Translations under genes and position numbers: made by a program
Notes under the pieces: generated by a model
What the model was told of the DNA's origin: nothing
Database searches by the model: none
Seen by the model: only the letters and a program-made list of their open reading frames with translations
Shown: positions 12,601-42,600 of the stretch, piece by piece
Layout: each line of letters begins with the position of its first letter
Position numbering within the stretch: the stretch's first letter is position 1
Source: Laetmonice hystrix
Taxonomy: Eukaryota
NCBI GenBank assembly: GCA_965235115.1
Contig: OZ249436.1
Span: 41,602,001 to 41,666,000 of the forward strand
Length of the DNA: 64,000 bases
Direction: 5' to 3'

Positions 12601-15600
12601 CATCACTATTATTCTTTGCAAACAGGTTACTTCTGCGTTCGAGCAGCCTGGCTTCCAAACCCTCAGGACTTTCTGAACTACACGGGAGATTCATGTCTGT
12701 GTCCAAGTAATGTGACAGGCGGGGAGTGTCAGCCGGGATACTACTGTCCCGCCGGGTCCCAGGATCCCACTGCCTGCGAGGAGGGACAGTACTGTTCCAC
12801 CCCAGGTAGGTCCACCACTTACCATCATTGTAGCGGAGGGGGGAGGAATGGCAGTTCTTCGTGTCAATCAAGCAAATTATGACAACGATCAGAGGTAGAT
12901 TTAGAGCCTGATTTGTTTAGTCAGCAGGAGCCGGTTTTACTAAAGAGTCGAAAATAATGACGTCAAAAATTTAACATAGAAGTGAATGGGATGCTAGTCA
13001 AAAATAACGACCTAGCAACCATTCACTTCTATGTTAAATTTTCGACGTCGTTATTTTCGACCTTTAGTAAAACCGGCCCCAGAATTCCCACATTAGAAAA
13101 TTCCTAGGATATAGATGTAATATACAATTTATTAGTTTGGTTAATTTTGGTGGAATTGACTTTGATCATAATTATATTCCAAATATTGGTACAAAAGTTA
13201 GGAATATACATTGTGATATTGTTTTGTTGCAGGTCTGCATACTGTGACAGGACCTTGTGATGCTGGGTTTTATTGTAACCGTGGGTCCAGCAGGTCGAAT
13301 CCAACAGATGGTACCACAGGAAACATCTGCCCACCAGGACGTTACTGTGGTACGTCAAGTTGTGATGTTTATACATGTATATGCTTACGGTGTCTTCCTA
13401 CTCAGATCTCTCTCTCCATGGTCATCTTAATCTTAACCTCGATTCATCAGCTTTTTTCTCAAGCCCAAGACGTTTTTATTGCTGATTCGTTCATCGATTA
13501 AACTGATGTATTGCTGTACAATTACAAAATGTATGTTTATCTATAACACATGTATATATGTGTAACGTTACTTCTGTACGTCTTTCAAAATTGTGAGAAT
13601 GAATCTTTGTATACTAGTTAGCTTAGGGATATAGAAGTTTGTTATAGCAATGTCTCACTCTATAGTATGAAGTTCTGATGTTCTTCAGTGATAGGCACAG
13701 GTAGTGACCCAGCCCGCTGTCCTCCGGGCACCTACTCCAACCGAACACAGCTGACCAGTGGGACTCAGTGTCAGGAATGTAAGGAAGGCTTCTATTGTGC
13801 ACAGCCGGGGCTGACTGAACCTACCGGCCCATGCGATGCTGGTAAGTGGCGGGTATTAGTGTAAAATAGGGCACCCGTTAGTTCAGGAAGATATATGTTT
13901 GAATTGAAACGTTGCGTTATTCAGAAATTGTTCTTACTGTAGGGTTGCACTCTGCCATTGAGACATTTTGACCCATAGTTAAATCCGGCAAATAACCAGT
14001 TGGAATGGAATATCATCCAACCTTTAAGGTGGTAAAGCTATGAGAGAAATAGTTTTGGTAAACTATAAAAGTTGACCTTTCTTGAGTGACGCTGGTAATG
14101 TCTGCTCTCGACCTCAGGATACTTCTGTCCAGCCGGTCAGAACTCCAGCAACCCGTTCCCCTGTCAGCCAGGGTTTTACTGTGAAATTGGTAGTCTCAAC
14201 ATGACTGCTTGTGACTCGGGAACCTATCAAAATGAAAACGCTCAGGGTGCATGCAAGGAATGCGTTGCAGGTAAGGGATCTGTTGGTTTCAGGACATTCA
14301 AGCCATGACAATGTAAAACATGTTTTACAATCCATTGCCTCAAATACAAATAATCTCAAACATTCATTGAAATCAATGATATTGATGCTAAAACTGTTTT
14401 AAACTTGAATCTTTGAATAAAACATGACATTAATTTCAGGACACTATTGCAACATTGCCAATGCGCCAGTGTCAGATTATACACCGTACCCATGCCCTGT
14501 TGGTTACTACTGCCCCAACGGTACCAAGTGGGCCCAACAGTACGGGTGCCCAGCGGGGACATACAACCCTGACACTAAGCTGGAGCGTGAGGACCAGTGT
14601 ACGGCCTGTGATGCTGGCAGATACTGTAGCGGAATCGGAAAACACACAACAACAGGTAGTGATGCGTACATTCTGTAGATGTCATGGTGTAGAAATCATG
14701 GTGTACAATACTACATAGTTAGGGGGAGAAAAGGTTGTATCAGTTAGATATCACATAAGTCTATATTCTCAGATTTCTTTTTTGCTCTTCAATGTTTTTT
14801 AAACTTAGTTATTTTGACCACTGAAGTCCTGTGAGCTCAGAATATTTTAGTACAGCAGGAACTTTAGTTGGATGAATAAAAAAAATCGATCTATAATAAA
14901 TGATGTAGGACTTAATGTTGTGTTGGTTGTGTTACAGCTGACTGTAGTGCAGGATTCTGGTGTAAACAAGGGGCAGCGAGCTCCACCCCTACGGACGGGA
15001 TCACAGGCATGGCCTGCCCTGAGGGCAGTTATTGTCCCCAGGGGGTAACTGTCCCTACCCCGTGTCCCCTTGGATCATGGTCCAACAGCACTGGACTGAG
15101 GGTCGAGGGTGAATGCATGCCGTGTTCAGGTGGATACTACTGTAACGGCACTGGTCTTACCGAGCCGTCGGGTCCGTGCGACCCAGGATATTATTGTAGT
15201 CGCAACTCCTCAACAGCTACGCCTGATGATGGGGGAGTTACTGGGGCCCCGTGTACGGCAGGCCACTACTGTCCATCAGGTACGGCCGACCCGCTACCCT
15301 GCCCACACGGCACATACATGGAGAACACCCACGCTGAGGCCTGCTGGACATGTACCCCAGGGTACTACTGCTTGACTGGGCTTGTTCCACAGACCTGTCC
15401 CCCAGGGTATTACTGCCCCCCGGGTACTGGCCTAGTGTGGCAGTCGTGTCCCACGGGGACATACAGCATTCAGACAGGACTAGCCAATGACACACAGTGC
15501 ACCCCCTGCCCTGGAGGATACTACTGCTCGGAGCTTAACTCAACAGTCGTCTCCGGTGAGTGTTCACCTGGGTATTATTGTACGGAGGGAGCAGACACGC

Positions 15601-18600
15601 CGACACCAGACGCCAACTTCAAGGGTACTGCGGGCCCGTGTACAACGGGACACTACTGTGGAGTCCGGACTGCACTCCCAGAACCCTGCCCCCTTGGAAC
15701 TTACAGCAACACCACACACAACCAGAATGTGACTGAATGCAAACCCTGCCTGTTTGGGAAGTATTGTGGGGAGACAGGACTCACAGAGCCCTCTGGTGAA
15801 TGCTGGCCTGGATTCTTCTGTTTGGAAGGAGCAAAGTACCCAAACAACCCAGTAGAGGACACTTCTGGAGGGCCCTGCCCCGTTGGACACTACTGCCCTA
15901 ATGGAACGTCCTACCCACTTGGCTGTCCCAGGGGTTCTTACAGTGTAAGCACCGGATCAGCCCTGTGTACACCATGTCCAGCTGGGTATTACTGCCTGGA
16001 GAATTCCACGACATATGCCTCAACACCCTGTCCAACTGGTCACTACTGTCCAGTCTCAACAGGAGCACCCTATGATTACCCCTGTGACAAAGGATACTAC
16101 AACAATTATACTGGTGCGTGTCTTTCTTCAAAATGTCAACTTATAAAATTCTATGTCCAGGTTGTCCTCTTTGGTCGGACATAAGTCTGGAGCCTCAGTA
16201 AAAATAGAAATCAAAGATCCTGTTCTGATTTATTTATTTAAAAGATTGTCTTAATTTCAGCCTGGTTTTAAAATATTTTATTCAGGTAAAGGCAGTAATT
16301 CAGACTGCCAGCCGTGCGAGCCTGGTGAGTACTGTGGTACCCCAGGGTTGACTGTCCCGACCGACCTCTGTGCTGAAGGTTGGTACTGTAGTCGGGCGGC
16401 ATGGTCAAGCAAACCTGCTGAGATCGGTAACAGTACGGTCAATGACACTTGCTTCTGTAGTGATCAGGACACAGGTGGAAGGTGCCTGCCTGGTCAGTAC
16501 TGTCCGCGAGGGTCAAGCATGCCACTTTCCTGCCGGAAAGGTAGGTCAATTCTGTTTCAAGTTTTTGGATTTATCATATTGTGAGACCTACATTGCCAAC
16601 TGTTTTTAGGGTCTCTGAGCAAAACGAATCACTGGAAAAGGTTTTTTTTAGATTTTTTTCTGCAAACATCTATTATGGTTTGAATTCAACTAGATTTTCT
16701 ACAGGTAAAATAAGGATAGTGTAGCAACAATACCTCTGGATCATGGAGCCATCTCTTATGTCCAGTCCAGTCAGGATTATCAATTGAGTTTTGCTGTTGG
16801 CAGGGTACTTCTGTGATGCACCTGAATTGTCCAATGTAACTGGGCCATGTTCTGCTGGCTACTACTGTGTGTTGGGTGCGAGGCGCCCTGACCCACAGAA
16901 CGACGCCACTGGAGGCGAGTGTCCCGTCGGCTCATTCTGCCCAGAGGGAACAGGAGATCCCATCCCTTGTCCCCGAGGGTATTTCTCCAACTTAACAAAG
17001 AACACTAACTTATCTGGCTGCCAGCCCTGTACAGCAGGTAGGTTCAAAGACCATCCAAGGTGGTAAATTCTGTCATAAACATTGATTGAGTAAACAATGT
17101 GAGAAATGCTTCTAGAGATGTGTTATGGGTAGTAACATTTGCTTTGAACTTGCTCGAAGATCACAAAAGGTAAGATTTTTAGTTGCTCTCATTGTTTCAA
17201 ATTGATGTTTAAAAAAGAAGTGTTGTTGGACATGTCTAGGCTACTACTGCGACAGCACTGGTCAAGGAAGTCCCCACCACCAGTGTGATCCGGGCTACTA
17301 CTGTCCTGCTGGTCAGATTGTTGGCGCCCCGCCCCTCTATGCATGCACCCCAGGTCACTACTGCCCCGCGGGGAGTCCAACTCAGCTGACCTGTCAACCA
17401 GGTACCTACCAGGATGAATTCACACAGGTTAGTGGTATACATGTGGAAGAAGATCATAGAACTTTACAATGTATCATCATTATAATCATAGTTTTAGGTC
17501 ACATCATGGGTTTTTTATGGAATGAAACAGTCTTTAGGTGAGATGCTTGCAGAAAAATGTTGAAGATGATTGAAGCCTCATGTGTCTTTGTATTAGATGA
17601 TCTAAGAAATGTTGGAAATCTTCTTTCTTCTTTATTGAGAGTAACCAAGGAAGTGTTCTCTATTTACAGTGGTCGTGCAAGCAGTGTCCGCAGGGTTACT
17701 ACTGTGATTCGAGCATCCAGAACGACACCTTCTGTTCCCACGGTGTACAGAACCCTCAGCCTTGCCCCACGGGTCACTACTGCCCCGCTGGAACAGGGTT
17801 TGCCACCGAGTATGGCTGTCCTAACGGAACTTACAGGTTGGAGCAGACCTTGCATAACATTCAATTAATAAAACAAAGGAACCCATCATGGAAAAATATA
17901 GATATTGATGAAACAGTGGCTTTTTAAATGGTCTGGAAAATTAATTTGGTGCGGCAATCTGTATGGGTCAAAATAACAATTTCTTACCAGGATAATGTAT
18001 GCACAGACTTTTATTTGCTCTATCACTACTAAAATTCTAAAATTATACCACTGCTGTCAATGGGGTGTTCTCTTTCAGTGACCGCCTCCTGCTGACCAAT
18101 GACACTGAGTGCACACTGTGTCCCGGTGGTCAGTACTGTGGTCAAGAAGGTCTGTCCTCACCATCAGGGTCGTGTCATGGCGGCTACTACTGTCTCCAGG
18201 GGGCATCCACTCCCAGTCCGACCGACAACACGACGGGCAACATCTGTCCCCCTGGCGCTTACTGCCCGCTTGGGTCCAACTTCACCACACTCTGCCCACC
18301 GGGGACGTACAACCCAACCCAAGGTAGTTGATACAAACTTAAGAGAAGGCATGTAATTGGATCAAGACTTTAGCACTAAAAATTTTGCAATGATTTTACC
18401 CTTTCTCTATATACAGGATGATCATAAAGTGAGGTAAACCAATAAATTTCTTGTGTATATTGTACACTGTAAATATTGCTTTTGGCACGTATTGGTAAAG
18501 AAAAATTGTCTTCAGGTCTTCAGTCAGTGAGTGAGTGCACCTACTGTGAACCTGGCCAGTACTGTCCTGGCTATGGTAACGTGAACCCAGCAGGTAACTG

Positions 18601-21600
18601 TTCGACGAGATACTACTGCTCCGGGAATGCCTCGGTGGCAACCCCAACTGACAACACTAGTGGCAACAAGTGTCCGGTGGGTCATTACTGCCCGGAGGGT
18701 TCGGCTCAGCCCATCCTGTGTCCTCCAGGGACCTACACAGACACTGAACTGAACTTGGCCTGCTTGGACTGCACCCCTGGCCACTACTGTATCACAGGCT
18801 CCAACCCTGAGGACTGTCCGGCTGGGTACTTCTGTCCCAAGGGTACGGGACACGTGTGGGAGTCCTGTCCACCCGGGACATTTAGCTCTGTGTCAGGCCT
18901 CTCCAACGTATCTCAGTGTACCGAGTGTACGGGAGGCTTCTACTGTGATTCCCCCAACATGACAACTGTGTCCGGTCCCTGCGATTCCAGATACTTCTGC
19001 CTCTCTGGATCAGACTCGAGAGCACCATCAGGATTGACCAGAGGAGATGCTGGAGTTTGCCCTCTGGGTCACTACTGCCCCCAGCAGACTGACTTCCCGA
19101 GGGCATGCCCAGCGGGAACGTTTAACAACCAGACAGGTATTGGCAGCGAGAGTCAGTGTCAGCAGTGTCCGCAAGGTTATTACTGTGAGCAGAGTGGTCT
19201 GACCTGGCCTAGCGGTCAGTGCCAGGCTGGTTTCTACTGCTCCGGTGGGTCAAATACCTCACGACCTGACACAGCGTCCAGCTCAGGAGGACCATGTCCA
19301 GCGGGGTCCTACTGCCCAGAGGGTTCCAGTTTACCTGCCCTTTGTGAGGCAGGGACTTATACATCCATCCCTCTTCAGGCTAACTGTACTGATTGCCCCG
19401 AGGGCTACTACTGCTCGTCTGGTGCCACAAATATCACAGACTGCCCGACAGGTACGTAGTCACAGCTCGTGCCCATATACAGACTTTCTTGGCTGAAAAA
19501 AGAGAAATATTAGCGTGAATATAGTTATCATGCTTCAGAGGTGACATTTATATAGTAAAAATCTACTTTGATTCCCATTAACATCTTTGCCTTAAAATCT
19601 AAATTAAAAATCAAAGGCTACCTACATATCCATCAGATCCAAAGTGTGCCGTATTTCTGTTTGTTTATTCTTTGTACATGTTTCTCCCACAGGATATTAC
19701 TGCCCCCAGAAGACCGAGTTTGCCACTCAGTACCCCTGTAACAACGGTAGCTTTAACAACATGACCAATGGCCAGGACCCGAGTGTCTGCCAACTTTGTC
19801 TGCCAGGGTACTACTGTCCAAGCAGTGGCATGTCTGTCCCACAGGCACCCTGTGCCCCTGGCTGGTACTGTACTCTAGGCTCATGGTCGGATAAACCTAC
19901 GGTCCTGGGTAATGACACGACTGCTACCTGTGTTTGCCCGGTAAATATGATGGGTGGGATGTGCAGAGCGGGTACCTATTGCCCCTCTGGATCCCATGCT
20001 CCGGTACCCTGTGACCCCGGGAAGTACTGCCTGGAGGACGAGCTAAGCACCGTCAGTGGTGACTGCATGGCGGGGTACTATTGTAACGGCAGTACCATCC
20101 TACCCAACCCAACCAATGACACTGCAGGGGACATATGTCCCAAAGGACATTACTGCCCAGTGGGAAGTGCATACCCTACACCTTGTGTTCCGGGAACGTA
20201 TGCGAACCGCCTACAGAATCAGAACGAGAGTAACTGCCTGCCATGTACGGCTGGGTACTACTGCTCTGGGTATGGACGAGACTTACCGAATGCGAAGTGT
20301 GATGTCGGATGGTACTGTCCAGAAGGGATGACCGTCCCACAGCCACCAGGTCAGCGGTGTCTTGCCGGACATGAGTGCCCACTTGGAAGTCCTGAGATGA
20401 CCTCATGTCCGTCCGGAGAGTATCAATCACTCCCTGGGCAAGGAGCATGTTTGTATTGTCCGCCAGGTATGTACTGCGACCAAAACGAAGCCATTGCTGA
20501 GCTGCAGAGTGGCACGAATGCTTCATCCCATGGCGTCGTAACACCAAAGATTTGCCCTGCTGGATTTTACTGCCCGAACGGCACCATGACAGCACGGGAA
20601 AACCCATGCCCAGTTGGGACGTATAGTAACACCACAGGACTTGAGAACGGGACGGAGTGTCGACTCTGTCCTGAAGGATTTTACTGTGAGGCTGAGAACA
20701 TCACAGAGCCGACAGGGCAGTGTGCCCCAGGGTTTTACTGTGTGCTGGGAGCACGGACCCCAACCCCGTCCCCAGGTGCAGAGTGGGGACCATGCCCCCA
20801 GGGGACATTCTGTGAACAGGGCTCCACCTGGCCTACCCCATGCCCCAAGGGGACATTCGGAGACCGGGACCGTCTGCCCTCTGAGCAAGACTGTACCATC
20901 TGTCCACCAGGAGAATTCTGTTCTCACTCGGGTCTCACTGCGTCAAATTCGTCTTGTCTGGCAGGATTCTACTGTACAAATGGGTTGGTGTTTACAGAAG
21001 TTTTATCTGATTTACATAATTATACTGACAGCTTTGTGTTACTGTTTATTACGTGACCAGTTCTGGAAAGTGGAGGTGACCAGCAATAGCTTTATCTTTC
21101 TGAAATCATCAGATCTAAATAAGATTTTGACAAGTTTGACTGTATGTACATTTTACTAGTTATGGTGTATAGATCAATTTTAAAAATAGCATTTTGATTT
21201 TCTTTAATGCTTCAATTGTTGAAACAAATGGAGAACATTTTGTGATGCAGGTCAGAGGAAGCCAACCCTGTTGGAAAGAGCTATGGTGATGAATGCCCAG
21301 TTGGCAGTTACTGCCCGGACCACAGTTACCAGCCGACCCCGTGCTCAGCAGGACACTTTCAGCCTCACCCCCGCATGACGAACATCACTGCGTGCCTGCC
21401 ATGTGATCCAGGAAAATACTGCAATGACTCGGGACTAGCTGCTGTTTCAGGCGACTGCTCTCCTGGCTTCTTCTGTGAGGGAGGTGCGTCGTCTCCGTCT
21501 CCACGAGATGGCGTGACGGGTAATATTTGCCCCGCTGGTTCGTACTGTCCCAGAGGTTCACATACACACCTGTTTTGCCCCACTGGGACATACACAAACC

Positions 21601-24600
21601 ACACAGGGGCCTCACAGTGTTATGACTGCCCTGAAGGGTATTACTGTATCGGACGGGATCGGGCTGAGCTCTGCCCAACCGGATACTACTGCCCACTGAA
21701 CACTGGGGCTGACTTGGAGCCGTGCCCGGCTGGGACATTCAACCCAACCCCAGGAATACGTAACTTGACGGAGTGTACACCCTGTAGTGGTGGACATTTC
21801 TGTTTGACACCAGGTCTGAGTTATCCATCCGGCACCTGTTCTGAGGGATACTACTGTATTACAGGTCAGACATATTCAACTTTACATTTGTTGAAGCAAC
21901 TTAATTCTTTACTGTTAGAGGTGTAGTATAGGTTTATGATATACTGTTACAGTATTTTGAATAATATACTAAGTATGGCCTTTTTGAAATTTCCTGATGC
22001 CCACAAACATAAACACCAATTTTATGGGGCATTTTGTTGTATTTGTGATGTAGGTGTTGACACCCAGACGCCAGGGGGCGCTCACCTAGGTGAGGGTGGG
22101 GACTGTCCTGTGGGATACTACTGTCCTGTGGGAACCACTGAGCCAATGCCCTGCCAGCCGGGTACGTACAGTGACAACCCGCGCCAGGCAATGTGTGACG
22201 AGTGTCCATCAGGCTACTACTGTCTGGCCAACTCAACAACGTACACACACCAGGTATGCCCGGCAGGGTACTACTGCACCAATGCAACACGGCATGCGTA
22301 CGAGTATCCATGTCCCAAGGGAACTTACAGTGCCTTCTCAGGACGTACCAATCTTGATGACTGCCAGCTTTGTCCTCCAGGAGAATACTGTGAAAGTATG
22401 TCATGGTTTTGTTTTATTCAATTCAATTCTTCCAATATATATTATCTCCAAATAAAATCATGCAGAGGAAATCCCATACTAACAGGGGATTTGGTCTTTT
22501 AGTTATGTTAGTTTGCAACATTTTTGTGATTCTGTAGATTTTATTTGGGTATTTATTGAATTATTTTGAATACTTCAAATAATTTACATTAATAGGACAT
22601 CAAAAATATCAACAACAGCGTAAATTTATAAGTGTTTCAATGTTTGCAGATGAAGGATTGTCTGCAACGAGTGGCAACTGTAGCGCTGGGTGGTTCTGCA
22701 CCGGTGGTTCATACATGTCAATGCCTGTAACCAATGGCAACAAGACGTCCCTCTCGGAATGCTCCTGTCCCGCTGTCAACTACACGGGAGGGAAATGTTG
22801 GCCTGGGACGTACTGTCCCAGTGGGTCTGCATATCCTGTGCCTTGTGAAGGGGGTTTCTACTGTAGGGATTACGGCCTGGCACAACCTAACGGACCCTGT
22901 GATGCCGGCTACTACTGTGACGGTAATGCCACACAACCTGACCCTCCGCACCGTGTGTGTCCTCATGGACATTACTGTGAGCAGGGGTCCAAGACTGCCA
23001 CCCCCTGCCCGGCGGGTACCCTCTCCAACACCTACGGGAACCCCAACGTCACCCTCTGTGGGGCCTGTCCGGCAGGTTACTACTGTGAAGCTACAGGAAA
23101 CACTAACTGGACGGGACCGTGTGCTCACAAGTACTACTGTCCCGCTGGTCAGTCGGTGGCCACACCTGCAGGTTTGTCAATCCACACAGAGTTTTGTGCA
23201 GGGAAAAAAAGCATATGCTAGAATGAACAAACAGATTTTTAGACCATAACAGGACTCCAGGGGTGCGTTCCACAAAGCCCGAAAGATGTCTTTGAAATGG
23301 TCGCTGAGGGCAAAGAGGTCTTTGCGGCGACGGGTGTTCCACTAACCACCTATTCTTTAACATTGGCCCTGCAGAGACGTCTTTCCAAACGCGTCTTTGC
23401 TAAAGACGTCTTTCGTTAGTGGAACACACCCCAGGCTCGGTGTTCCCTGTAGGTGACTGCAGTGCTAGCTTCTACTGCTCCTTATCTGTTTTAGATGTCA
23501 TAAAAAGATTAGTTTCGGAGCAATTTGTGGTGCCTTTTCTGATAACATGATGACTTATTTGCATGTTAGCCTATGGGTGCACAATTGGTCACTACTGTCC
23601 CGGAGAGACGGGTGAACCCAAGCCATGTGAGGCTGGAACGTATGAGGACGAGACCTTGCAGAGTGAGTGCAGTGGCTGCCCAGCTGGAAGGTTAGTGTGT
23701 TCACCGGAAAGGACTTTGTAAGAAATTTAACAAACATTGACCAGTGCAAATAATATTAATGAAATTGGAAGATGCGAAAATTTGATCTGAATTAAGAATT
23801 TTCAATTTACCTTGAATTCACATCAGGTATTGCGACCCAGTTGAAGCAGCAGTGGTCTACAACGTATCCACCCATGGTACAGTGGTGCCATCGGACTGTC
23901 CCCAAGGGTATTACTGCCCAGAGAACACCACCTCCAGTCGACAATATCCTTGTGCGCCAGGAACCTTCAGCAATGTCACTAACCTCTATATGCAGACACA
24001 ATGTCGTGACTGCACTGCTGGCTTCTACTGCAACAATGAAGGTTTGTGACTCATAAATTGTCAAAAGAGGAATATTTTTGAAGGGTAAATACCATATATG
24101 CTCTTAGGGTCTGAAGAAGTGCGGATGGATTGGCAGTTGGAACCTTCATCAGCCAATACAAATATTTGTAGATCTAAATGGATATTTATCTTATTGATGA
24201 TGTCAATATTTTCCATTGTCAGGAATGACTTCTCCAAGAGACCTCTGCGATGCCGGCTATGTTTGCGTGGGGCGGTCAAACACGTCACGTCCAACAGATG
24301 GCACTACAGGTTATGTGTGTCCACCGGGGTCATACTGCCCGCGAGGCTCAGGCCAGGAGACCAGTTGTCCTCGCGGAACATTCAGTAATACCTATAGACT
24401 GGAGAATGTGACCCAGTGTGAGGACTGTACTCCTGGAATGTACTGCCAGACTGACGGTATGCTTATACTGCTATAGATCAACATGTTAAAAAATGAAGTT
24501 TAACAAGTTCAAATTTACTGGAACATTAACCTGTCATTACATACATTGCATACGTTGCTCAAGTTTTGTACAGGCTTTAACTTTGTTGACAGTACTTAAG

Positions 24601-30600: not shown

Positions 30601-33600
30601 CGCTGATCTACAACCCTGCCCCCTGGGAACGTTTGGCAATACTACTGGACTTGGGAAGGAATCTCAGTGTAGCCAATGTACAGGTATTGCGACTGTTAAT
30701 GATATAGGATATATTGAAAAATGGATAAAAATTCAGGGCCTTACAGGCCCCAGTTAGATCAGTGTTTACATTCGTGTTTTAGAGGTTCAAGTTATATACA
30801 TTCTGTTTTAAAAGATTGTATTTGTTGATGTGGCCAAGTTGACATATTCAAAGTTTGACTCTGTGTTATAGGAGGGTACTTCTGTGGAACGCCAGGATCA
30901 AGTGAGCCTGATGGGGAGTGTGACCCAGGTCACTACTGTGAGTATGGGGTGGACACCCTGCGCCCCACTGACAATTCACCCCACACCGGGGTTGGAGGCG
31001 AGTGTCCGGCAGGAAGTTACTGCCCTTGTGGTACAACCAATCCGTTACCATGCCAACCTGGCTCTTATAATGATGCCACTGGTGAGTAGTTGATGCATCG
31101 ATGGGACACATTATTTACTAAACTATAATGTGACAAAGAGTCGTTATCCAGTCTGGGTAACCAGTGGCGTACCCAGAGGGGGGTGCTTGGGGTGCTCAAG
31201 CACCCCCCTCAATTTGCCCATTTTTTTGGGGTGTGCGCCCACACTGCCACAGGCACAGCCCCCTCCCAATTTGCAGCGCCTACGACGTTGGTTATTTCCA
31301 GCACCCTCCAGGGTCCAGTTTCTGGGTACACCACTGGTAACTTGGTTATAATTAAGAAATAGTAGTGGGACTTTGTTCATTTCATTTTAAGAGATGTCTC
31401 CTCAGATCATTCGTTTCAGATGTTATTATATATTTTATTTATCATCACAGTTTGAGTTTGGAAGGCTAACAGTTGAGATGCTAGAGAATGTAGCATTCAA
31501 CCCTCTATGAGTGGGCCTCAGCTATTCTACTGTTGGAACTGATTTTTATCCAAGTCGCTCTATGCTCCTGTGGAAGGTTTAATGTTTGTTATTCTGTCCA
31601 CTAGGTCGTGCCTCATGTCAGACATGTCCTGGTGGCTACTACTGTGTGCTCAACACGACCAACCCGACAGGTGCTCCATGCCCTGTCGGTCACTACTGTC
31701 CCGCCGGTACAGGCTATGACAAACAGTTCCCCTGTCCTGCTGGAACGTATAACAGCGACACAGCAATGTCCAATTCTTCCGCCTGTCGACTGTGTACAGC
31801 AGGCCAGTACTGTGACGGGGAAGGTCTTAATGCTCCGACAGGCAACTGTAGTGAAGGTTGGTTCTGTACAGGGGGTGCATCGGTCTCCAAGCCCACTGCT
31901 CTTGGTGAGTATGTCCCAGCGGCATGCAACTTTAAACCCCCATTTGGCAGACGTTTGTCACAACTGTCACATGTGTTAGAATTTTACAAATTTGATAGTT
32001 TTTTTTACTGTTACTATCCAGATATGGTCATTCTGTATTTGGCACAGATAATAACAATTACTTCTGCCACTTTTGTTTAAAAATTCAAATTTGTCCCCAC
32101 TGGCTCGCCATAATTATAGGAAACTACAGCTCTATCGACATGTGCAGCTGCCTTGAGTTTAACTACACTGGTGGGAAGTGTCAGCCAGGGTCCTACTGCC
32201 CGTCTGGATCGTCGGCACCTGTGTCCTGTACACCTGGTTACTACTGCGCTGATTACACTCTCCCGTCACCCTCAGGTAAGAAAACACCTGTAATCTGTAG
32301 TCTCTCTAGTGGGTACATTGAAATACATACATGTATACTCTCATCTCCAACTATTTTAAACATTATCGGTATTCTGATGTGTCGTCATATAGCTCAGTGC
32401 CAGGCTGGGTTCTACTGTCCTGGTGGCCAAATGGTTGCCAGCCCACCTCAGTTTGAATGCCTGATTGGACACTACTGTCCGATTGGCTCTGGGTCACCGA
32501 TCCAGTGTCCGAATGGAACTTTCTCCAATACAACAGGCAACACAGAACTTGCCAACTGCTTACCGTGTACCCCTGGTAAGTCGTAACATTCTCAGCAACA
32601 TTCTGCAAGTCGTGATTGCCACATAATTAGATATAATTCAAGTGTGGACAGATTCTTGCTACATCAAGCAAAACTGAAGAACATACTTGTTCTATGCTGT
32701 TTTCTGTATTTATTACATTAGTGGCATGAAAAGATCAAATGTGATGTTATTCACCAAAACAGACGAAAAACACCCTTCATAGAAGGGTGGAAACAAGCTA
32801 GAGGATTGATTCTAAAGTGAATTTGTATAGATTTAGCAGTTGTGATTCTTCTTTCGTAGAAATAACCTGTTTTCAGCTGTCATGATTTGACTTTATGTTG
32901 TGGTCATCAGGATCATACTGCAGTGGCGTGGCCTTGGTGAGCGTATCTGCAGACTGTGCTGCAGGCTTCTACTGTCCGGGTGGCCAAAGCACCGGGTCAC
33001 CTGCTGAGTACTTGTGTACTAAGGGTTCTCACTGCCCCACTGGTAGCCCCATCCCTGTCATCTGTCCAAGAGGTAAGAAAAGAATTTGGAAGAAAATGTA
33101 TGAAATAATGAGTTTAGACTATGATATGCCATATATTTTATATTTTAATAAGCTGCCTTGAATACAGCACAAGATCATAGTGATTTAAATGTACATAGTC
33201 GATGTGACGGAGAAATAATATCGGAGGAGAGTGCTTGTAAAGGTGGACAAGACTAAACCAGCCAATGAATGCATTGTTTTTGTCATCAGGCGAGTACCAG
33301 GACGACGAGGGAGAGGCGACTTGCAAGCCCTGTCCTACAGGAAAGTACTGCGACCCTCATGAGCTGGGCAATGCTACGGGCATTATCAACCCAGTGAGCT
33401 GTCCCATGGGGTACGTGTGTCCACTGCGCACCAAGTTCGCCACCCAGAACCCATGTCTGCCTGGGAGATTCGGCAACGTCACCGAGCTGACAAAACTGAG
33501 TAAGTACTGGTCACAGTTGGTTAGACATTTCATGACCTTCCCTGAGTAAACTCAACATGGAAGTCCCAGTGCCACAGCCATGTTATGGTAATTGGGGTTT

Positions 33601-36600
33601 TGATAGCTCTGTCTTCTCCCAAAGTGAAGCCAGCAAAAACCAGCATGGTTTTTGGTTTACCAAGGCACTGGAAAGTTTATCCACAGCTTTATGTATGGTC
33701 CATGTCGACTTCCCCTGGTCAGATTGTATTCTGTGCCCAGGATAATGTCTGCCATGTACACTTTCTGGGTCAGATAATTTGTCACTTGTATTCTGTGCCC
33801 AGGATAATGTCTGCCATGTACACTTTCTGAGTCAGATAGTTTGTCACTTTGTATTCTGTGCCCAGGATAATGTCTGCCATGTACACTTTCTGGGTCAGAT
33901 AATTTGTCACTTGTATTCTGTGCCCAGGATAATGTCTGCCATGTACACTTTCTGAGTCAGATAGTTTGTCACTTTGTATTCTGTGCCCAGGATAATGTCT
34001 GCCATGTACACTTTCTGGGTCAGATAGTTTGTCACTTTGTATTCTGTGCCCAGGATAATGTCTGCCATGTACACTTTCTGGGTCAGATAGTTTATCACCT
34101 TGTATTCTGTGCCCAGGATAATGTCTGCCATGTACACTTTCTGGGTCAGATAGTTTATCACCTTGTATTCTGTGCCCAGGATAATGTCTGCCATGTACAC
34201 TTTCTGGGTCAGATAGTTTGTCACTTTATATTCTGTGCCCAGGTGAATGTCTGCCATGTACATCCGGGTCATACTGTGAGACGCCAGGCCTCACACAACC
34301 AACAGCCATGTGTACTGCTGGATACTACTGTACACTGGGCTCCAATTCGTCAACACCAACAGATGGCAGCACTGGTGATATCTGCCCCATGGGGAGCTAT
34401 TGCCCAACAGGCTCCATGATTGGTGAGTTATTCACGTAACACTTCATGCTTTTTTATACTTTGTTTCAAAAATATTTCACAGAATGCATATCACTAAAAT
34501 TGTACCGGTAACTATATCCGACTTATTACAGGGCTCTTATTACAATTTTGTTGATCAGTTATTCACTGATCATTCTATTCTTGATATTTGTTTCCAGGCA
34601 TTCCCTGTCCACCTGGTCGCTATGGCAACACGACAGGCCTGCGTACACCCACCGACTGTCCGCCCTGCGACCCCGGATGGTACTGTCCCACCACCAGGCT
34701 GACCACACCCTATGAGCAGTGTGAGGCAGGCCACTACTGTGAATCAGGAGCCACACAGCCGAACCCAATAAATGAAACCTCGGGCTACCTGTGCCCACAG
34801 GGACACTACTGTCCCATGGGTACACCCACACCGACTCCGTGTGGGCGGGGCACCTACCAACCTGATGCAGGTCAGTGGGTCACACGGGTTACCGGTACTT
34901 ACCCCGGTACATTCAGTTAATGAATGAAATCGATCTCTCATTAGTTTACATATCAAACGGAGGTTGTGCAGTTCATTATGGCCGGTTCATTAGGAGATAC
35001 CCGTCACAGATCCTTAACGTTTTTAAAGTGTACTCAAACGACTCATATAGTTGGGTTGGATCCTTTTCAATCAAGGAATTGTTTAGTCACAAAGTAAGAG
35101 GTTCCTTCAAAATATGGTGTAGATATTTTTCATAATTATTTTGGAAGCCGTTTTTAGATTGCAGAGGTACTAATTAAAATCGATAGTTCCGTTCCATGTG
35201 TTCAATGAAATAAAAGGGAAGTTTGGGTAAAATTTGTATATTTATTGGTGTAATTGTTTTTATTGAATGCGGCAGACAGTGAAATCTCAGGTTGTTTTTA
35301 CATGAGATGTGCCATGTAATCCGCATCCATGCATGTTTAGCAAGAAATCAGCACATCCCTTGTGAATGTCATCAACTTTCCCAGGGTGAATTGAAGTGCT
35401 CGAAGTGGCCACTTTTCTAGCTCGTACACATACTTCCTTCTGCTTCTTATAGCTGAAAGTTTGGAAAGTATTTTAGGTAATAGGTGGCAAAGTTCTGTTA
35501 ATTATTCACTGAACTTGTAGAGTTTTTTAAATTAACGCATGGCATTTATCAGCTTTTCGTTCTTTCAAACACATCTGCACATTCGTGGTTTAACCAGCAC
35601 ATAAAACACATCATGTTTGAAGCTGTCACAATATGTCATATTTTCTTTTTTTACCATACAATGTACTTAAAGTGCAACTGACATCACATAGGTAACTTTA
35701 CTGATCTAGATAGATCACTTTGAGTTGTAGCCGTATCCCTGATAGGTTTTCTGAGAAGTCCTCTCAATTTAGAAAAATATTGAAAATTCGAATCTCGCGC
35801 CTCATTACAGTTTCACTCCTGCCTATTCTTTACCATTGCCCCTGATGACGTCACTAGGGGAATTGGTCTTTAAAATGGCTTACACACAGTTCATATTCTT
35901 GTACAATAACCGCTCCTTTAAGTTAAACAACAACAAATTACATGTATCATCAGGATCTGGCACTAAATTTCATGTAAATTTTGATGTCTGTTGGACTTTA
36001 AAAATAGTTACCAATGTCTGACTGAGACTTTGTGGTTTTAGTAATATTCTAATAGACGAGTCTGGTATACGAATGGTTGTACACGTATATGAATGTCCTA
36101 GTTGTGGTCAGAATTGACATAAGGTAATAAACAAGAATGACAAGGAATACTACATTAAAGGCATAATATAAAATTCTAAGTTTTAACTAATCTACGGAAA
36201 ACAAAACAGTGCATTTCCATGGTGTTAAAAGATTAGAAAAGTAGAATTTTTGAAATTTAATTTCAGGAAAGCGTTCCATTGATGACTGTGTACCGTGTGA
36301 GCCAGGCCACTATTGTCTAGTTTCTGGGCAACCAAACGTCACTGGACCATGTGTGGAGGGCTACTATTGCAGCGGAGGGGCCATGGACCCCAACCCTAGA
36401 GGTCGGTATTAGCTAACACAGCGACATGCAAATTGTTTAGGTTTTTATTGAAATAATTTTGTTTTGTTTTTCCCCTTACATTTTTTTTTGTGGTCCTTTT
36501 TGGGGGAAGGGAGGATGTTGTCAGGAATAATCATAGAAATAAAGACGTTAATGTTAATTTGAGAGGAAAAGGACTGCAAGGAGTTATTACTCAAATGTAA

Positions 36601-39600
36601 AGTAAATTCAAACCAATTAAATTTTTTCTGTATTGGTAACCCACCTTTGTCTTGTAGACAACCAAACTGGAAACATCTGCCCTGTCGGTAACTATTGTTC
36701 AGAGGGGAGTCTGATGCCAACACCATGCGCTAACGCCACCTACATGAACCACACTGGAGCAGCTCAGTGCTATGAGTGCCCAGCGGGTTACTATTGCACC
36801 AATCGGGACCGCGCAGACCCGTGCCCACACGGCTACTACTGCCCCAGGGGTACGGGAGCTGGGCAGCTGCCCTGCCCTGTGGGTGAGTTCATGAGGATTC
36901 ACTGGGTCTCTACTTAATTAACACCAATTAACACCAATTAACGTGGGTTTTAAGTTGTACTGGATATAGCTTTACCATAGTAGGCTCATGGAGGACGGAT
37001 AACGTTCTATGTAACTGAGACATTTTACTATTGCCTTACTGATTTTACTCGTATATCCTGACTAATACCGACGGATTGCAAAGAAATTGCTATGGGCCAT
37101 GCCAATGATCTTTCATGCTCCTTTTCTGCCAGGATCCTACGGAGCGACGACCCATCTGATGGCAGAAGGGGACTGTAGTTTGTGTACTGGTGGATCTTAC
37201 TGTGATGTCCCTGGTCTGGCTACACCTGCTGGGTCATGTGATCCAGGTTACTACTGCACTACTGGATCCAATATCTCAAACCCACAGGCTGGGGTCCCAT
37301 ACACTGGTCAGGGTGGTCGGTGCACGGCCGGCTCAGAATGTCCCCAGAACTCTACCTACCCGAAGGCATGTGAACCAGGCTGGTACGCCGCGGTGGAAGG
37401 CTTGGCGGCCTGCAACCCATGTCCTTCTGGTGAGTCTGATGAAAGTCCTTAATTATTACATCAATTGTATTTAATTCTCCATGTCAGAAAGGCCTGACAG
37501 TTTTACCCACAGATTTAAACATTTAAATTGGAAGCCAGGGTCCATCATGTCAGACCATCTGCTCTCTTCCATTGGGAGAAACCTGATGATGTATGGGCTA
37601 TTGACCATTATTAGAGGGGAGAAAAATAAGATAATTTTTTATTGATTTGTTATTGATACTACCGACTACTCCAGTGTTTTTCAATTCCAGGGTTCTACTG
37701 CCTGAATGAGACGGTAGTTCCTGTGGAGTGTCCATCTGGCCACTTCTGTCCAGAGAAGACCAGGTTTGCTACAGAGTTCCCTTGTCCCGAGGGTACTTAC
37801 AACAACGATACAGGTCAGTCCAGTGGATGGCATCTCTTATTAATCTGTAAAGTTTATGCTTAGAATCTGCCCTAGCAGGTCGAAAAGATTTAAGTTGGAG
37901 ACATTCAGGACTATTCAAGATATATGAACAAAATGCGTTGCTGTCATTGCAGGAGCTAGCAATGACTCGAGTTGTCAGGCCTGCCCACCTGGGTCATACT
38001 GTAGCGGGGTGGCGAATAGCGCAGTGGATGGCCAGTGTGACGCGGGTTTCTACTGCAGTGGAGGGTCCTTCCAGAGAAGACCATACAGTATCGGGCAGCT
38101 AGTCAACACCACTGGAGGGTACGTTCAGGGTATGGAGGGGTGCCTGTGGAGCATCAGTATGTATGGGTGTAAGTTTTCTCTGGGGCTAGTTTCAGTAATT
38201 CTGATCATTTGGATCTTGTCACAGTTCTAGGGCTGATAGTCTCAACGGTTGCTCTCTGGAGCTTCAGTAGTTTATTTTTTATCTTTAATGATTGGTTACG
38301 TGTTTCAGTGATCTTACGTCCAACAACACCTGCTACCCGACATGGGACTGCGTGTGTCCAGCGTTCCACCTGTCCACAGGAGGAATGTGTCCTCCCGGGT
38401 CGTACTGCCCCCAGGGCTCAGTAAAACCACTTCCGTGCGACTCCGGCAAGTACTGTGCTGACCCTGGCTTGGCACTGCCATCTGGTGAGTGATGCTTGTA
38501 CCATTGAGCACCTCCAAAAAACTGACTGCTCCACCTACATAGATACTGAGATACAGTTTGAGGCTAAATTCAGGAGTTTAACAGAAAAATCAATCCTTTC
38601 ATAAAGAAAGCTATAAACCTCATAATCTTTCCCTAAAATATACCAGTATAAGTTCTATAATATAATAAACCCAATTATTTCTCCATCGGCCTATATTGAT
38701 CTGCACTTCTTTTCCCGTTCCGATAGATGACTGCTCTGCTGGGTACTACTGCAATCACTCTAGCTCAACCCCGACCCAGTACATCTGTCCTGTTGGTCGG
38801 TACTGTCCGACAGGTACTGGCGTTCCGTTCGCCTGCCCAGCTGGTACATTCTCCAACACGACCCACAACACCGACCTCATTCACTGCCGTAATTGTACGG
38901 GTGGATACTACTGTGCAGGTCAGTGTGTTATTGGTCTATCACATGTGAATATGATGTTGTTATCTTCTATCTTGACGGTGTTGTCATGAAGTTGTTTTGG
39001 TGGTAAATTTGACATGAGATTGCTGTGATATTCAGGAGAGGGTAACGAGTACCCGACTGCTGAGTGCAGCGCAGGGTTCTACTGTCCAGGGGGTCAGGAC
39101 ACTGCCACGCCCCAGTCCCTGCCTTGTCCGGCGGGTCATTTCTGTGATGTGGGAACAACGTTCCCTGAACTGTGCACCAATGGTACTTACCAACAGGAGA
39201 CTGGTCAGGACCACTGCGACGTCTGTCCACCGGGATACTACTGCAACGCTCTCGATGGTAGGTGTGCAGGGCTATGTGGGTGCATGGTGCTACCATCTAG
39301 TGGTTCGGCACTCTAGTAATTAGGGTATTTAGCATATAGTGCTGCAGATATGTGAAAGAATTGTGCCTTTAATGAAAGAAGCATGAAATTTGGCACACAG
39401 TTAGGGAATGCCCTAAGGAAGATATTTGGCCATAGGGACATCGTAGACTTGCTCTGTGACAAAAATTGCAGCCATTTTTCAAATCTTATTTATTACCGTA
39501 CACATCACACATCAATGGTTCTTCTGACCACATATCGGTTGAAGATTGCAAAGAATGACAGACTGGGTTTAAAAAAATCAAGATCAGTGAAGTTTATATA

Positions 39601-42600
39601 TGGTGGATTTAGAAAAATAGCGGACTTTGGTGCAGTTGGCCTAAAACACTGTGTTGTTAAAAATATGGAGACGATTTTTGAAACTTTAAAGATCGTTGAT
39701 ATTGTAGAGACGTTGATTATTTAGAATATCGTTCATGTAGTCTTAAGCAGTAGGGACTTAGTTCATGACTTTTAAGCTAACTAGATTGATGAAATATCAC
39801 TTTTCAGGCAACATCACAGTTATACAGGGTAACAAGTATAAATTTAATAATCTCAAATGAAATCACAGAAATTTATTTGTCCCTCACCTAGGATAAGAAT
39901 GGCTCAGAATCTAAACCAAGTTTGATGCAAAATCTTGCACCAAAAATACTGGTAATTACATTTAATGTCAGTCTTTGATGTTTATTTGTTTAGTTACAAT
40001 TTACATTTTTAAACATGTGGGTAAAAGTGTCAGACTTGTGGTAAGAACCTGAGCTATTGTTGTGATTTCTTTTTCACAATTCATCACAAATAATTACACA
40101 ATTGGTAATGTGCCTGAATTGAATGTTGCCCTTTTTGTTACGATCCATCAACACTAACGATCACAGTTACCATATGTGTGTTAGATGTATGTTTCCATAA
40201 TAATAACAGTTTACAAGGAAACTTTTTGTGTGTCTTCTTACAAGTTTAGTATTCTTAAAGTAACATAAATGGTAAGAAATTTTCACTAGTTCTTTTGTCA
40301 TTCGTTGTATTCCACCAATTGCATTTATTGAATTAGCTTTGGAACTTAACATTTTACTAAGTATAATTACTGCATCTTATTTCATTAGTTTCTATCTTTT
40401 CCCATACTTTTTGTGACTTTACTGATAACTGGTCATAGCAACTAATGCTTTAAGTAATGGTCCTGAAGAGTCACCAATTCTGTCTTGTCTGAACGTATTG
40501 AATAGTGCCCAGTGACTTGACATCAGAAACTAATTTTTGTCGTCTGGGTTTCCTTCTCAATCGTAAAGTTGTAACATTTGTATTTTCTTGAGATTTCATT
40601 CCTCATGCAGTTTTGAAGGGCACAAAGAATTCTGTTTATGGAGAGAAAAGGACAAGTAAAATTTGATGCATGAGGACAACATCAGATTGCAGGTGTTGTT
40701 ATATCGTTTTGTTTCCATGGTAACAGGAGTAACAGTAGTGATGCCTGCAGCCTGTCCAGTTGGCCATTATTGTCCAGAGGGAACTGCCATGGCAACATCA
40801 TTTCCTTGTCCAGCGGGAACGTTTGCCCCAACGACACACTACACCAGCCTGGACAATTGTACCAGCTGTACTGCAGGAATGTACTGCGAAAGTGCAGGAC
40901 TGGAGCTGCCGTCTGGTGGCTGCTGGGCAGGTTACTACTGCACTGAGGGAGCGTCATCTCCAACACCTCACAATCATATGGCAAGTACTATATCCTGGGC
41001 TTCTAAATAGATCTTGAAATGTTTTCTTTATTTTGATAACATTCTATCCAAGACTTGTGACCGCAATGAAGAGGAAATCAAAAAGAGGAAAAGTTGCAAC
41101 ATATGTTCTGTAAGTGACTGTTTCGATTTAGTGTCCTTCATTTGCAGTCACTTGATACTATAATTATATTATATTTATATTTATAACAGGTTGACCTAGC
41201 GAATAACGAGACATTTACTGGGAATGATGTGTGTCCGATAGGCTACTACTGCCCCAATGGTACAGTCTACCCAGTACCATGCCCAATTGGCTCATTCTCC
41301 ATTGTTGAGGAGGTGCGCAATGTCAACGGCTGTGAGCCCTGCCCTCCAGGCCATTATTGCAATGCCAAGGCCTTCACAAAGGTCACCCAGGCCCCTCTTT
41401 GTGACCCTGGGTAGGTACCTTGTGATGAATGAAGATTTTAAGGTCATGCAAGGTTACATCTTGAAAATTTTGATACATTTAAACTTTAGGCTGTATGTAG
41501 ACCTACTATATCTCAGAGGTTGTAGGGATACCTTAAAGCTAAAGAAAGTATTAAATATGTGGTCTATTGATCACATAAATTAAATCCTTTTCCATGTACA
41601 TGTAATGATACGTCCTGCTGTTAGTCCACATCAGATGAAACTAGTGTATTTTGCATGGTTGGCTGATAAATCTAAAAATAGTAGTCTACATAACTTTGTA
41701 CCGTGTAACATCAGTTAAGGCAATTTTCAGTTTGGTTTCAGTACAGCCAAGACTCAAATGTCTGCTCGGAATTTTCCCCGGGTTTCTCTTTCAGCTATGT
41801 GTGTACAGGTGGTGCCAAGCAGCCTCAGCCTATCGACTACGTGGAGGGATATCCATGTCCACGTGGTTACTACTGCCCGGCCGGATCGACCGTACCCCTT
41901 GGTTGTGACATTGGCACATACAACGACAAACTGGCCCAAGCCAACTGTACAATCTGTTATGCTGGATCCATGTGTCATGAAACCAACATGACAACTCCCA
42001 TTGATTGCAAAGAAGGTACAATGGATGGGTGTTACAGACAAACCCGACCACTTCAAAAACTAGATAACTGCATTGATATATTTGTAGATGCAGTCTTCTT
42101 TTCTCTTTATTTAGGTAGTACATGAATATTTTTGTTCAAATGTATAATGCTATTCAAAGGTTATCTGTATTATCTAGTTGCTGTCAGATTTTCGTGAAAG
42201 ATATTCATCTCCTAAGTTCGTTGCAATTTGAAAGGCGTTTTGGAGAGGGTTGATTGACGAGCAAACATTAGACGAGAGACATCATGACTTATTCCGGTTG
42301 CTTTAACCTGTTATTCTGTGTGTGACCAAGGTTACTACTGTCCTGCCGGAGTGGCCCCACAACCTTGCCGAGAAGGGACGTTCAACAATCGCACTGGACT
42401 CAAGGTCCCAGAAGAATGTACCTACTGCTCCGTCGGACGTTTCTGTCAGGGCGTCGGCAACACCCAGCCCTCTGGTGAGCATCGACAATATCAGGTCATG
42501 TCTGAGTAAAGCAATGGGAGATCTGTGGTATTTGTGGCACAATCTTCAGAATTTTTGGTTATAAATACCTGTCAACCTGTTATAGAGCCCAGCATGGAGT

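What the first reader, a model, noticed from the sequence alone, without database searches (positions are those of the whole stretch)
12626..40980. Hidden ~700-aa super-repeat (titin/nebulin-style higher-order periodicity) in the ectodomain
A rare insert ending C-x-C...GG-x-C recurs seven times: AAWLPNP..CLCPSNVTGGEC (12718), AAWSSKP..CFCSDQDTGGRC (16474), GSWSDKP..CVCPVNMMGGMC (19953), CSCPAVNYTGGKC (22787), GAWSNKP..NDTGGIC (27883), CSCLEFNYTGGKC (32170) and CVCPAFHLSTGGMC (38379). My hand-counted spacings in the spliced CDS are 697, 699, 708, 704, 703 and 710 aa. Two other markers keep the same ~2.1-kb period: the (H)GVxxPxxCPxG loop (exons 26, 31, 34, 39, 48/49, 58, 68/69) and the RDRA/KNRA motif (exons 35, 43, 52, 62). 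The nearly constant length despite sequence divergence suggests a molecular ruler or periodic binding sites.
Basis: seen in the sequence. Interest (0 to 1): 0.8.

Follow-up and report, generated by a model that had tools for sequence, protein, structure and literature searches.

The report
Conserved 700-residue super-repeat, giant receptor
The outer part of a roughly 10,000-residue, uncharacterised membrane protein is built from eight ~700-residue units that have kept their length and order since before animals diverged, so the reported super-repeat is real, but nothing yet shows it acts as a ruler.

Summary
I built a splice model of the + strand gene: 80 exons and 7,677 aa within the window, mostly phase-1 introns. 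A self dot-plot of that protein shows strongly enriched diagonals at about 700, 1,405, 2,110, 2,810 and 3,515 aa. There are eight units of 681-710 aa (window 8874-43841), not six periods. All seven GGxC markers sit at the stated coordinates, on the seven internal unit boundaries.

Each unit is a ~74-aa cap carrying the marker loop plus three homologous ~208-aa blocks. All are made of Ephrin_rec_like / growth-factor-receptor cysteine-rich modules, with about 74 Cys per unit.

The same 668-712-aa period dominates orthologues from hemichordates, echinoderms, amphioxus, a tunicate, a ray, molluscs, a brachiopod, cnidarians, Trichoplax and the protist Chromosphaera. In a tree, units group by position rather than by species. 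The architecture is therefore ancient, and later change came by whole-unit duplication.

AlphaFold gives a high-confidence structure (pLDDT 92-93). The closest solved structure is the cysteine-rich rod of Chlamydomonas mastigoneme MST1.

The ruler or periodic-binding idea is untested. Segment lengths show no compensation, so a rigid scaffold explains the constant length equally well.

The parts
210..59674 (+). Giant gene, cut at the window's 5' end (at least 5 more exons lie upstream). About 80 exons reach 46062, and further exons run to a stop near 59672. It encodes a type I membrane protein of roughly 9,500-10,000 aa.
   Evidence: Splice model. Collinear tblastn of the crinoid orthologue P0042 from 45111 to 59590. 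Upstream exons.
210..8873 (+). N-terminal cysteine-rich region before the super-repeat (aa 1-1585 of the model). It uses the same module type but has no 700-aa register.
   Evidence: only partial unit-HMM matches.
8874..12717 (+). Super-repeat unit 1 (aa 1586-2281, 696 aa). Its 3' end carries the first marker loop.
   Evidence: Unit HMM match h6-698, 882 bits. Coordinates.
12718..16473 (+). Super-repeat unit 2 (695 aa).
16474..19952 (+). Super-repeat unit 3 (695 aa).
19953..22786 (+). Super-repeat unit 4 (708 aa), first of the four 'RDRA-type' middle units. It is encoded by only 4 exons.
22787..27882 (+). Super-repeat unit 5 (704 aa).
27883..32169 (+). Super-repeat unit 6 (700 aa).
32170..38378 (+). 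Super-repeat unit 7 (710 aa).
38379..43841 (+). Super-repeat unit 8 (681 aa), the last unit. Its end carries only a degenerate marker.
43842..48905 (+). Terminal cysteine-rich modules and a non-repeat juxtamembrane region, including the conserved exon 48457-48618.
49273..49332 (+). Single transmembrane helix followed by a basic stop-transfer motif.
   Evidence: ORF translation, aligned to the crinoid orthologue.
49333..56903 (+). Cytoplasmic tail rich in charged residues and coiled coil, spread over many exons.
   Evidence: Collinear tblastn hits to P0042. Purine-rich skew.
57484..58340 (+). Conserved cytoplasmic globular domain (65% identity to the crinoid over 109 aa). No Pfam family matches it.
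59267..59674 (+). C-terminal coiled-coil exon and stop codon.

Best explanation
What it is. The window holds most of a giant type I membrane protein. Its ectodomain is a long chain of Ephrin_rec_like / growth-factor-receptor-type cysteine-rich modules.

Hierarchy (shown). Modules of about 45-50 aa form ~208-aa blocks. Three homologous blocks plus a ~74-aa cap make one ~700-aa unit. Eight such units follow each other head to tail.

History (shown). The units arose by tandem duplication before animals diverged. At least five unit types have one-to-one orthologues in Trichoplax, cnidarians, a tunicate and a ray. A single middle unit then became four in the lineage shared with hemichordates and amphioxus, and six in another species. 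These changes were always by whole units.

Mechanism (inferred). Each unit folds as a disulfide-ladder rod, by analogy with the 678-aa, 26-nm cysteine-rich rod of mastigoneme MST1. One unit would then span about 25-40 nm. The eight units would form a stiff, glycosylated stalk of about 0.2-0.3 micrometres, punctuated every unit by a flexible loop. Unit length stays constant because each locked module tolerates few insertions or deletions, and because every unit is individually under purifying selection.
For: - Periodicity: dot-plot harmonics and shuffle control.
- Eight full-length unit matches to the unit HMM.
- Nearly gap-free alignment of the units.
- Three blocks homologous over 199-201 columns, hhalign E 1e-54 to 1e-62.
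- Conservation: a 668-712-aa period is the top self-similarity peak in about 30 metazoan orthologues and in both Chromosphaera proteins. The 169 full units from 88 proteins average 688 +/- 19 aa.
- Age: units cluster by position with 97-100% local support, and the window's 8 units need 8 label changes on the tree. BLAST is collinear with Glandiceps, Ptychodera, Lytechinus, Branchiostoma and Trichoplax at 46-68% identity. Intron positions are hardly shared between units: 8 of 51 positions are shared by two units and none by three or more.
- Structure: AF2 pLDDT 93.5 / pTM 0.72 for 429 aa, and 92.2 / 0.50 for a whole 709-aa unit. The only low-confidence stretches are the HGV loop and the boundary insert.
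- Closest solved structure is MST1: Foldseek E 1e-16 and profile E 1.2e-19. Rod dimensions are taken from PMC11015965 and PMC10602792.
Against: - No expression data exist for this species: no RNA runs were found. The splice model rests on homology and coding statistics.
- No model coordinates were available, so rod shape and length per unit are inferred from MST1 and not measured. A pTM of 0.50 for the whole unit leaves long-range geometry uncertain.
- Orthologue gene models are automatic predictions, some partial or flagged low quality. Unit counts per species may be underestimates.
- The tree is FastTree with local supports only.
- In bony vertebrates and most protists the ~205-220-aa block period is stronger than the 700-aa one, so the unit is not universal in the family.
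Confidence: 0.85

Rival explanations
1. Molecular ruler or periodic binding sites. The ~700-aa period is selected because it matches the spacing of a partner, or because it sets the length of a cell-surface structure, as in titin and nebulin.
For: - The period is held at 668-712 aa across phyla at about 40% unit identity.
- Unit number changes only in whole units: 5, 6, 8 and 10.
- A flexible loop with at least one N-x-S/T sequon marks every one of the 7 internal boundaries.
Against: - No partner is known.
- There is no compensation between segment lengths: var(total) 207 against a summed 191.
- Units have diverged into distinct orthologue groups and are not kept alike.
- Unit number differs between lineages.
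- The rigid disulfide scaffold explains constant length by itself.
Confidence: 0.2
2. Mastigoneme-like self-assembly. The units are lateral association surfaces, and molecules pair or polymerise in register with a one-unit stagger to form surface fibres, as MST1 cysteine-rich rods do.
For: - MST1 is the only solved protein found by sequence profile, and it is the top fold match.
- Its 678-aa cysteine-rich domain drives antiparallel dimerisation and filament formation (PMC11015965).
- The family occurs in many flagellated protists.
- The zebrafish orthologue is testis-enriched (bioRxiv 10.1101/650218).
Against: - The match to MST1 is partial (profile positions 348-652) and the TM-score is low (0.34). 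This is shared module type, not shared architecture.
- This protein is membrane-anchored with a large cytoplasmic coiled coil.
- No MST1-type Ig array or polyproline helix was seen where checked: Pfam on four exons and on the orthologue's C-terminal third found only Ephrin_rec_like, and the tail is a TM helix plus coiled coil.
- No self-association was tested.
Confidence: 0.15
3. The 700-aa signal is only a by-product of the ~208-aa block repeat or of the ~50-aa modules, with no distinct higher unit.
For: - Blocks are strongly homologous.
- Sub-peaks appear at offsets of about 210, 290, 410 and 490 aa.
- The block period dominates in protist and bony-vertebrate relatives.
Against: - Shuffling 208-aa chunks cuts the best offset bin from 3,305 to 774 on average, with a maximum of 1,039.
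- The cap with its marker occurs once per three blocks.
- The unit HMM matches end to end, h1-700, in many species.
Confidence: 0.03
4. Recent segmental duplication, concerted evolution or an assembly artefact produced the similar units.
For: The units are tandem and of equal size.
Against: - Units are only 36-49% identical to each other but 55-68% identical to their orthologues in other phyla.
- The tree groups units by position.
- Intron positions differ between units.
Confidence: 0.02

Closest known systems
Chlamydomonas mastigoneme protein MST1, cysteine-rich domain (PDB 8wa2, 9b4h, 8tx1)
   Same: - Same module family; the depositors' molecule names for MST1 include an Ephrin type A/B receptor-like domain-containing protein.
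- It is the only PDB sequence hit (E 1.2e-19) and the top Foldseek hit (E 1e-16).
- Its cysteine-rich part is a single 678-aa, 26-nm disulfide-ladder rod, close in size to one unit here.
   Different: - MST1 has one such rod with 26 disulfides, nine Ig-like domains, a polyproline II helix and no membrane anchor.
- Here there are eight consecutive ~700-aa units with about 37 potential disulfides each, a transmembrane helix and a ~1,900-aa cytoplasmic tail.
- The alignment covers only part of a unit, and the TM-score is 0.34.
Titin and nebulin super-repeats
   Same: The logic is the same: short modules are arranged in a fixed order that itself repeats, and equivalent positions in different super-repeats are more alike than neighbouring modules.
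   Different: - The fold is different: cysteine-rich modules instead of Ig/Fn3 or nebulin repeats.
- The location is extracellular instead of sarcomeric.
- No known partner filament has a matching period.
- The units here are anciently diverged orthologue groups.
ELAPOR1 and TNF-receptor cysteine-rich domains
   Same: There are weak Pfam (PF23091) and Foldseek matches. The general type is the same: small disulfide-bonded, beta-hairpin modules.
   Different: Those proteins have a handful of modules and no higher-order period. The matches are far weaker than to MST1 (E about 0.01-1).
Uncharacterised orthologues: Ptychodera, Glandiceps, Saccoglossus, Lytechinus, Branchiostoma, Trichoplax TRIADDRAFT_55968, zebrafish-type si:ch211-286b4.4
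   Same: They are collinear at 46-68% identity, with the same ~700-aa units and the same C-terminal tail.
   Different: None has a described function. Several fish and reptile copies are labelled 'SCO-spondin' or 'zonadhesin-like', but their precomputed Pfam content is only PF07699. Unit number differs between species.

Membership tests
[quoted passage not shown] | Pfam model match above the gathering score | tested here: met
   The long exon at 8195-9918 (queried as window 8106-9965) scores 27.9 bits against a cut-off of 23.1. The C-terminal third of orthologue P0042 scores 28.3 bits. Most listed homologues carry precomputed PF07699.
[quoted passage not shown] | Regular invariant cysteine framework and a fold like solved members | tested here: met
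   There are 50 invariant columns, mostly Cys, in alignment A1 and 73 in A2. AF2 pLDDT is 92-93. The fold matches MST1, ELAPOR1, TNFR and the Eph ectodomain.
Titin/nebulin-type super-repeat | A fixed order of several modules that repeats, with position-specific conservation | tested here: met
   Dot-plot harmonics, shuffle control and unit alignment.
Titin/nebulin-type super-repeat | A period that matches the structural repeat of a bound filament (ruler function) | not testable with these tools
   No partner is known. The length-compensation test gave no support.
Titin/nebulin-type super-repeat | Ig/Fn3 or nebulin modules in an intracellular sarcomeric protein | tested here: not met
   The modules are cysteine-rich and extracellular, upstream of a transmembrane helix.
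Mastigoneme MST1-like proteins | N-terminal Ig-like domain array and C-terminal polyproline II helix | tested here: not met
   Pfam found only Ephrin_rec_like and TNFR-like matches in the parts scanned (four exons and the orthologue's C-terminal third). The C-terminus is a TM helix plus coiled coil. The most N-terminal exons outside the window were not scanned by Pfam.
Mastigoneme MST1-like proteins | Polymerisation through the cysteine-rich rod | not tested
   No complex prediction was run.
SCO-spondin / zonadhesin (names carried by some homologues) | TSR, LDLa, VWD, TIL or MAM domains | tested here: not met
   None appeared in the exons scanned or in the orthologue's C-terminal third. The homologues so named list only PF07699.

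The most novel reading that the evidence does not exclude
The ~700-aa unit is a conserved assembly or spacing module of an unrecognised, pan-eukaryotic cell-surface fibre. Molecules would associate in register through their cysteine-rich rods, mastigoneme-fashion. The sequon-bearing boundary loops would then give a periodic surface pattern of about 25-40 nm. Unit number (5 to 10) would set the height of the structure, and the cytoplasmic coiled coil would tie it to the cortex or to cilia.
Probability: 0.15. Interest if true: 0.8.

Novelty: new member of a known kind. Interest (0 to 1): 0.55.

Why it matters
This is one of the largest membrane proteins encoded by animal genomes. It is present from protists to reptiles, yet it has no described function and is often mislabelled as SCO-spondin or zonadhesin-like.

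An eight-unit, three-level repeat hierarchy with one-to-one orthology of units across phyla gives a reliable frame for annotating these genes. It dates the duplications to before the animal radiation. It also gives concrete handles for experiments: express single units, or delete one unit.

If the period proves to have a structural counterpart, it would be an extracellular analogue of the titin ruler. If not, it is a clear example of length conservation imposed by a disulfide scaffold.

Tried and rejected
- A blastp self-search returned only the identity hit, so I replaced it with my own dot-plot.
- The DP model added a spurious 60-bp exon (31277-31336) and false exons beyond 46 kb, because its codon table was trained on the repeats. 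I removed the first and replaced the rest with homology to P0042.
- RNA evidence: no RNA runs hold this locus.
- Earlier scan notes: none near this place.
- Literature: searches for the domain names and for giant ephrin-receptor-like proteins gave no paper on this family. The only mention was the zebrafish orthologue in a testis-enriched gene list.
- Protein-atlas search of the conserved cytoplasmic domain gave only unnamed, mostly viral clusters at 0.93. I judged this uninformative.
- Pfam found nothing in the cytoplasmic or juxtamembrane domains.
- Own-genome search found no second locus at E <= 1e-20. Only the best candidates are scored, so this is a lower bound.
- No complex prediction was run, because I do not claim binding.
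Full report
**Gene and model**

The window is eukaryotic DNA. It carries a very large + strand gene made of short exons, each encoding cysteine-, glycine- and proline-rich repeats.

I built a splice model by dynamic programming. It used a codon table trained on the long open exons plus generic GT-AG site scores. The result was a chain of 80 exons between 210 and 46062, nearly all separated by phase-1 introns, encoding 7,677 aa without a stop. I removed one 60-bp exon (31277-31336) because it broke the repeat register.

The model is supported by collinear, almost gap-free matches of 46-68% identity to predicted proteins of hemichordates, a sea urchin, amphioxus and Trichoplax. No RNA runs exist for the locus.

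The gene runs off the 5' end of the window, with at least five further exons upstream. It continues 3' to about 59674. The crinoid orthologue XP_033122761.1 (P0042) matches collinearly from 45111 to 59590. That stretch covers:
- a juxtamembrane region;
- a transmembrane helix near 49273-49332;
- a tail of about 1,100 aa rich in coiled coil;
- a conserved globular domain (57484-58340, 65% identity over its first 109 aa) with no Pfam match;
- a last coiled-coil exon.

The whole protein is about 9,500-10,000 aa.

**The observation**

Their spacings in my model are 695, 695, 708, 704, 700 and 710 aa.

- Offsets 676-725 contain 3,252 high-scoring windows.
- Almost every other 25-aa offset bin holds fewer than 900; the 1,852 in bin 1401-1425 is the second harmonic.
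- Harmonics follow near 1,405, 2,110, 2,810 and 3,515.
- Shuffling the region in chunks of 208, 104 or 52 aa lowers the best offset bin from 3,305 to 774, 495 and 169 on average.

The long period is therefore not a by-product of the short ones.

Along the protein, the 700-aa self-similarity starts near aa 1,440 and ends near 6,880. A profile built from the aligned units finds eight end-to-end matches at aa 1586-7174, which is window 8874-43841. The region is thus wider than 12626-40980.

Units are 681-710 aa long. They are 36-49% identical pairwise, with 2-12% gap columns. The (H)GVxxPxxCPxG loop sits in one column of all units. RDRA/KNRA occurs in units 4-7 only.

**Anatomy of a unit**

Partial matches of the unit profile in other species break at profile positions of about 58, 268, 476 and 683. 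Cutting the alignment there gives three ~208-aa blocks. These are homologous over 199-201 columns, with hhalign E-values of 1e-54 to 1e-62.

What remains is a ~74-aa cap that straddles the unit boundary and holds the marker insert. This explains the sub-peaks at offsets of about 210, 290, 410 and 490 aa.

Each unit has 71-76 cysteines and 14-20 N-x-S/T sequons. Each of the seven boundary inserts contains at least one sequon. With about one sequon per 39 aa as background and a post hoc choice of window, this is only suggestive.

Pfam assigns the modules to Ephrin_rec_like (PF07699) just above threshold, with a weak TNFR_ELAPOR1 match.

**Structure**

AlphaFold2 was run on the 429-aa exon 19695-20981 with 80 aligned homologous segments. 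It gave mean pLDDT 93.5 and pTM 0.72. A whole unit, the Glandiceps orthologue of unit 4 (709 aa, 77 aligned units), gave pLDDT 92.2 and pTM 0.50.

In both models the structure is a succession of short beta-hairpins.

Foldseek against the PDB puts the Chlamydomonas mastigoneme protein MST1 first (E 1e-16, TM 0.34). ELAPOR1, TNF receptors and Eph ectodomains follow far behind. A profile of 77 units finds MST1 as the only PDB sequence match (E 1.2e-19), and that match is partial.

According to the cryo-EM papers:
- a second cryo-EM study measured ~11-Å spacing in the MST1 disulfide ladder;
- this domain mediates antiparallel dimerisation and filament formation (PMC11015965 and PMC10602792).

By analogy, one unit here would span roughly 25-40 nm. 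This is an inference.

**Relatives and age**

An exhaustive profile search found 9,419 proteins at E <= 0.001, many of them 4,000-8,000 aa long. Named members come from the following groups:
- hemichordates, echinoderms, amphioxus, tunicates and a ray;
- bony fishes (si:ch211-286b4.4, often labelled SCO-spondin or zonadhesin-like), frogs, lizards and an alligator;
- molluscs, a brachiopod, a nemertean, an orthonectid, cnidarians and Trichoplax;
- protists: Chromosphaera, Salpingoeca, Bodo, Aphanomyces, ciliates, metamonads, Fabomonas and Bigelowiella.

No mammal, bird, insect or nematode appears among the 120 listed hits. This does not prove absence.

I repeated the dot-plot on the long proteins.
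- A 668-712-aa period is the strongest peak in almost all invertebrate and cartilaginous-fish orthologues and in both Chromosphaera proteins.
- In bony vertebrates and most protists, the ~205-220-aa block period dominates.

Over all retrieved proteins, 169 full units in 88 proteins average 688 +/- 19 aa.

A tree of 55 full units from 11 proteins groups units by position, not by species.
- The window's eight units need eight label changes.
- The position clades have 97-100% local support.
- Units 1, 2, 3 and 8 and one middle unit each have orthologues in several early-branching or distant taxa (all five in Trichoplax, Hydra and Clavelina; some also in the ray and Nematostella).
- The middle RDRA-type unit is single in Trichoplax, Hydra and Clavelina.
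- It is fourfold in the window's protein. Each of these four copies groups with a unit from Glandiceps, and three of the four also with units from Ptychodera and Branchiostoma.
- It is sixfold in an unnamed ENA protein.

Full-length unit matches per protein run from 5 (Trichoplax, Clavelina) through roughly 6 (Hydra) and 8 (window) to 10.

Intron positions are barely shared between units: 8 of 51 positions are shared by two units and none by more. This fits ancient duplication followed by independent intron turnover. The exon structure does not follow the super-repeat.

**Interpretation**

The super-repeat is a real, ancient and conserved architecture. How it arose is reasonably clear: block triplication plus a cap, then tandem unit duplication before animals diverged, then a few later whole-unit duplications.

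Why the length is constant is less clear. I tested for compensation. Over 177 units, the variance of total length (207) is no smaller than the sum of the variances of the four segments (191). So there is no sign of selection on total length beyond the constancy of each locked module.

At the same time, each unit is conserved as its own orthologue group, so the units are not interchangeable spacers. The ruler or periodic-binding idea remains possible but unsupported.

The MST1 link suggests a further possibility of lateral, in-register self-association. This rests only on shared module type.

The zebrafish orthologue appears in a list of testis-enriched genes together with ift74 (bioRxiv 10.1101/650218). 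This is a weak hint at ciliated or flagellated cells.

**Verdict**

The structural interpretation is supported and the functional interpretation is open.

Higher-order repeats are well known in giant modular proteins such as titin and nebulin, so I rate this as a new member of a known kind. I found no description of this family or of its period in the searchable literature.

Noticed in passing
window 62640-64000, - strand: Pieces of an hnRNP H/F-like gene (glycine/tyrosine-rich segments and RRM-like exons), convergent with the giant gene.
   Followed up: no
window 12900-13070: A near-perfect inverted repeat of about 75 bp per arm lies inside the intron after exon 12626-12805. It looks like a MITE-type hairpin element.
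   Followed up: no
window 47950-48400: The intron holds tandem copies of a unit of roughly 190 bp. The same short peptide-like ORF pieces recur two to three times. The first gene model mistook them for exons.
   Followed up: partly
L006 (G000:C1:41592301-41602300), about 0.5-1.5 kb upstream of the window start: Three almost identical ~49-aa exons of the same gene stand in tandem. This is a recent exon-level duplication at the N-terminal end, in contrast to the ancient 700-aa units.
   Followed up: partly
window 57484-58340: A cytoplasmic globular domain, the best-conserved stretch of the tail beyond the membrane (65% identity to the crinoid). It has an H-x3-H-like motif and no Pfam family. The atlas search was uninformative.
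   Followed up: partly
homologues P0186, P0190, P0198, P0199, P0203, P0207, P0210: Fish and reptile orthologues are named SCO-spondin or zonadhesin(-like) in public records, but their listed Pfam content is only PF07699. These are probable misnomers.
   Followed up: partly
window 19693-20983 and 14938-16113, versus 32170-38378: Intron density differs about threefold between units: unit 4 touches 4 exons and unit 7 touches 12. Units 2-4 contain exons of 0.9-1.3 kb, which suggests local intron loss or unequal intron gain.
   Followed up: partly
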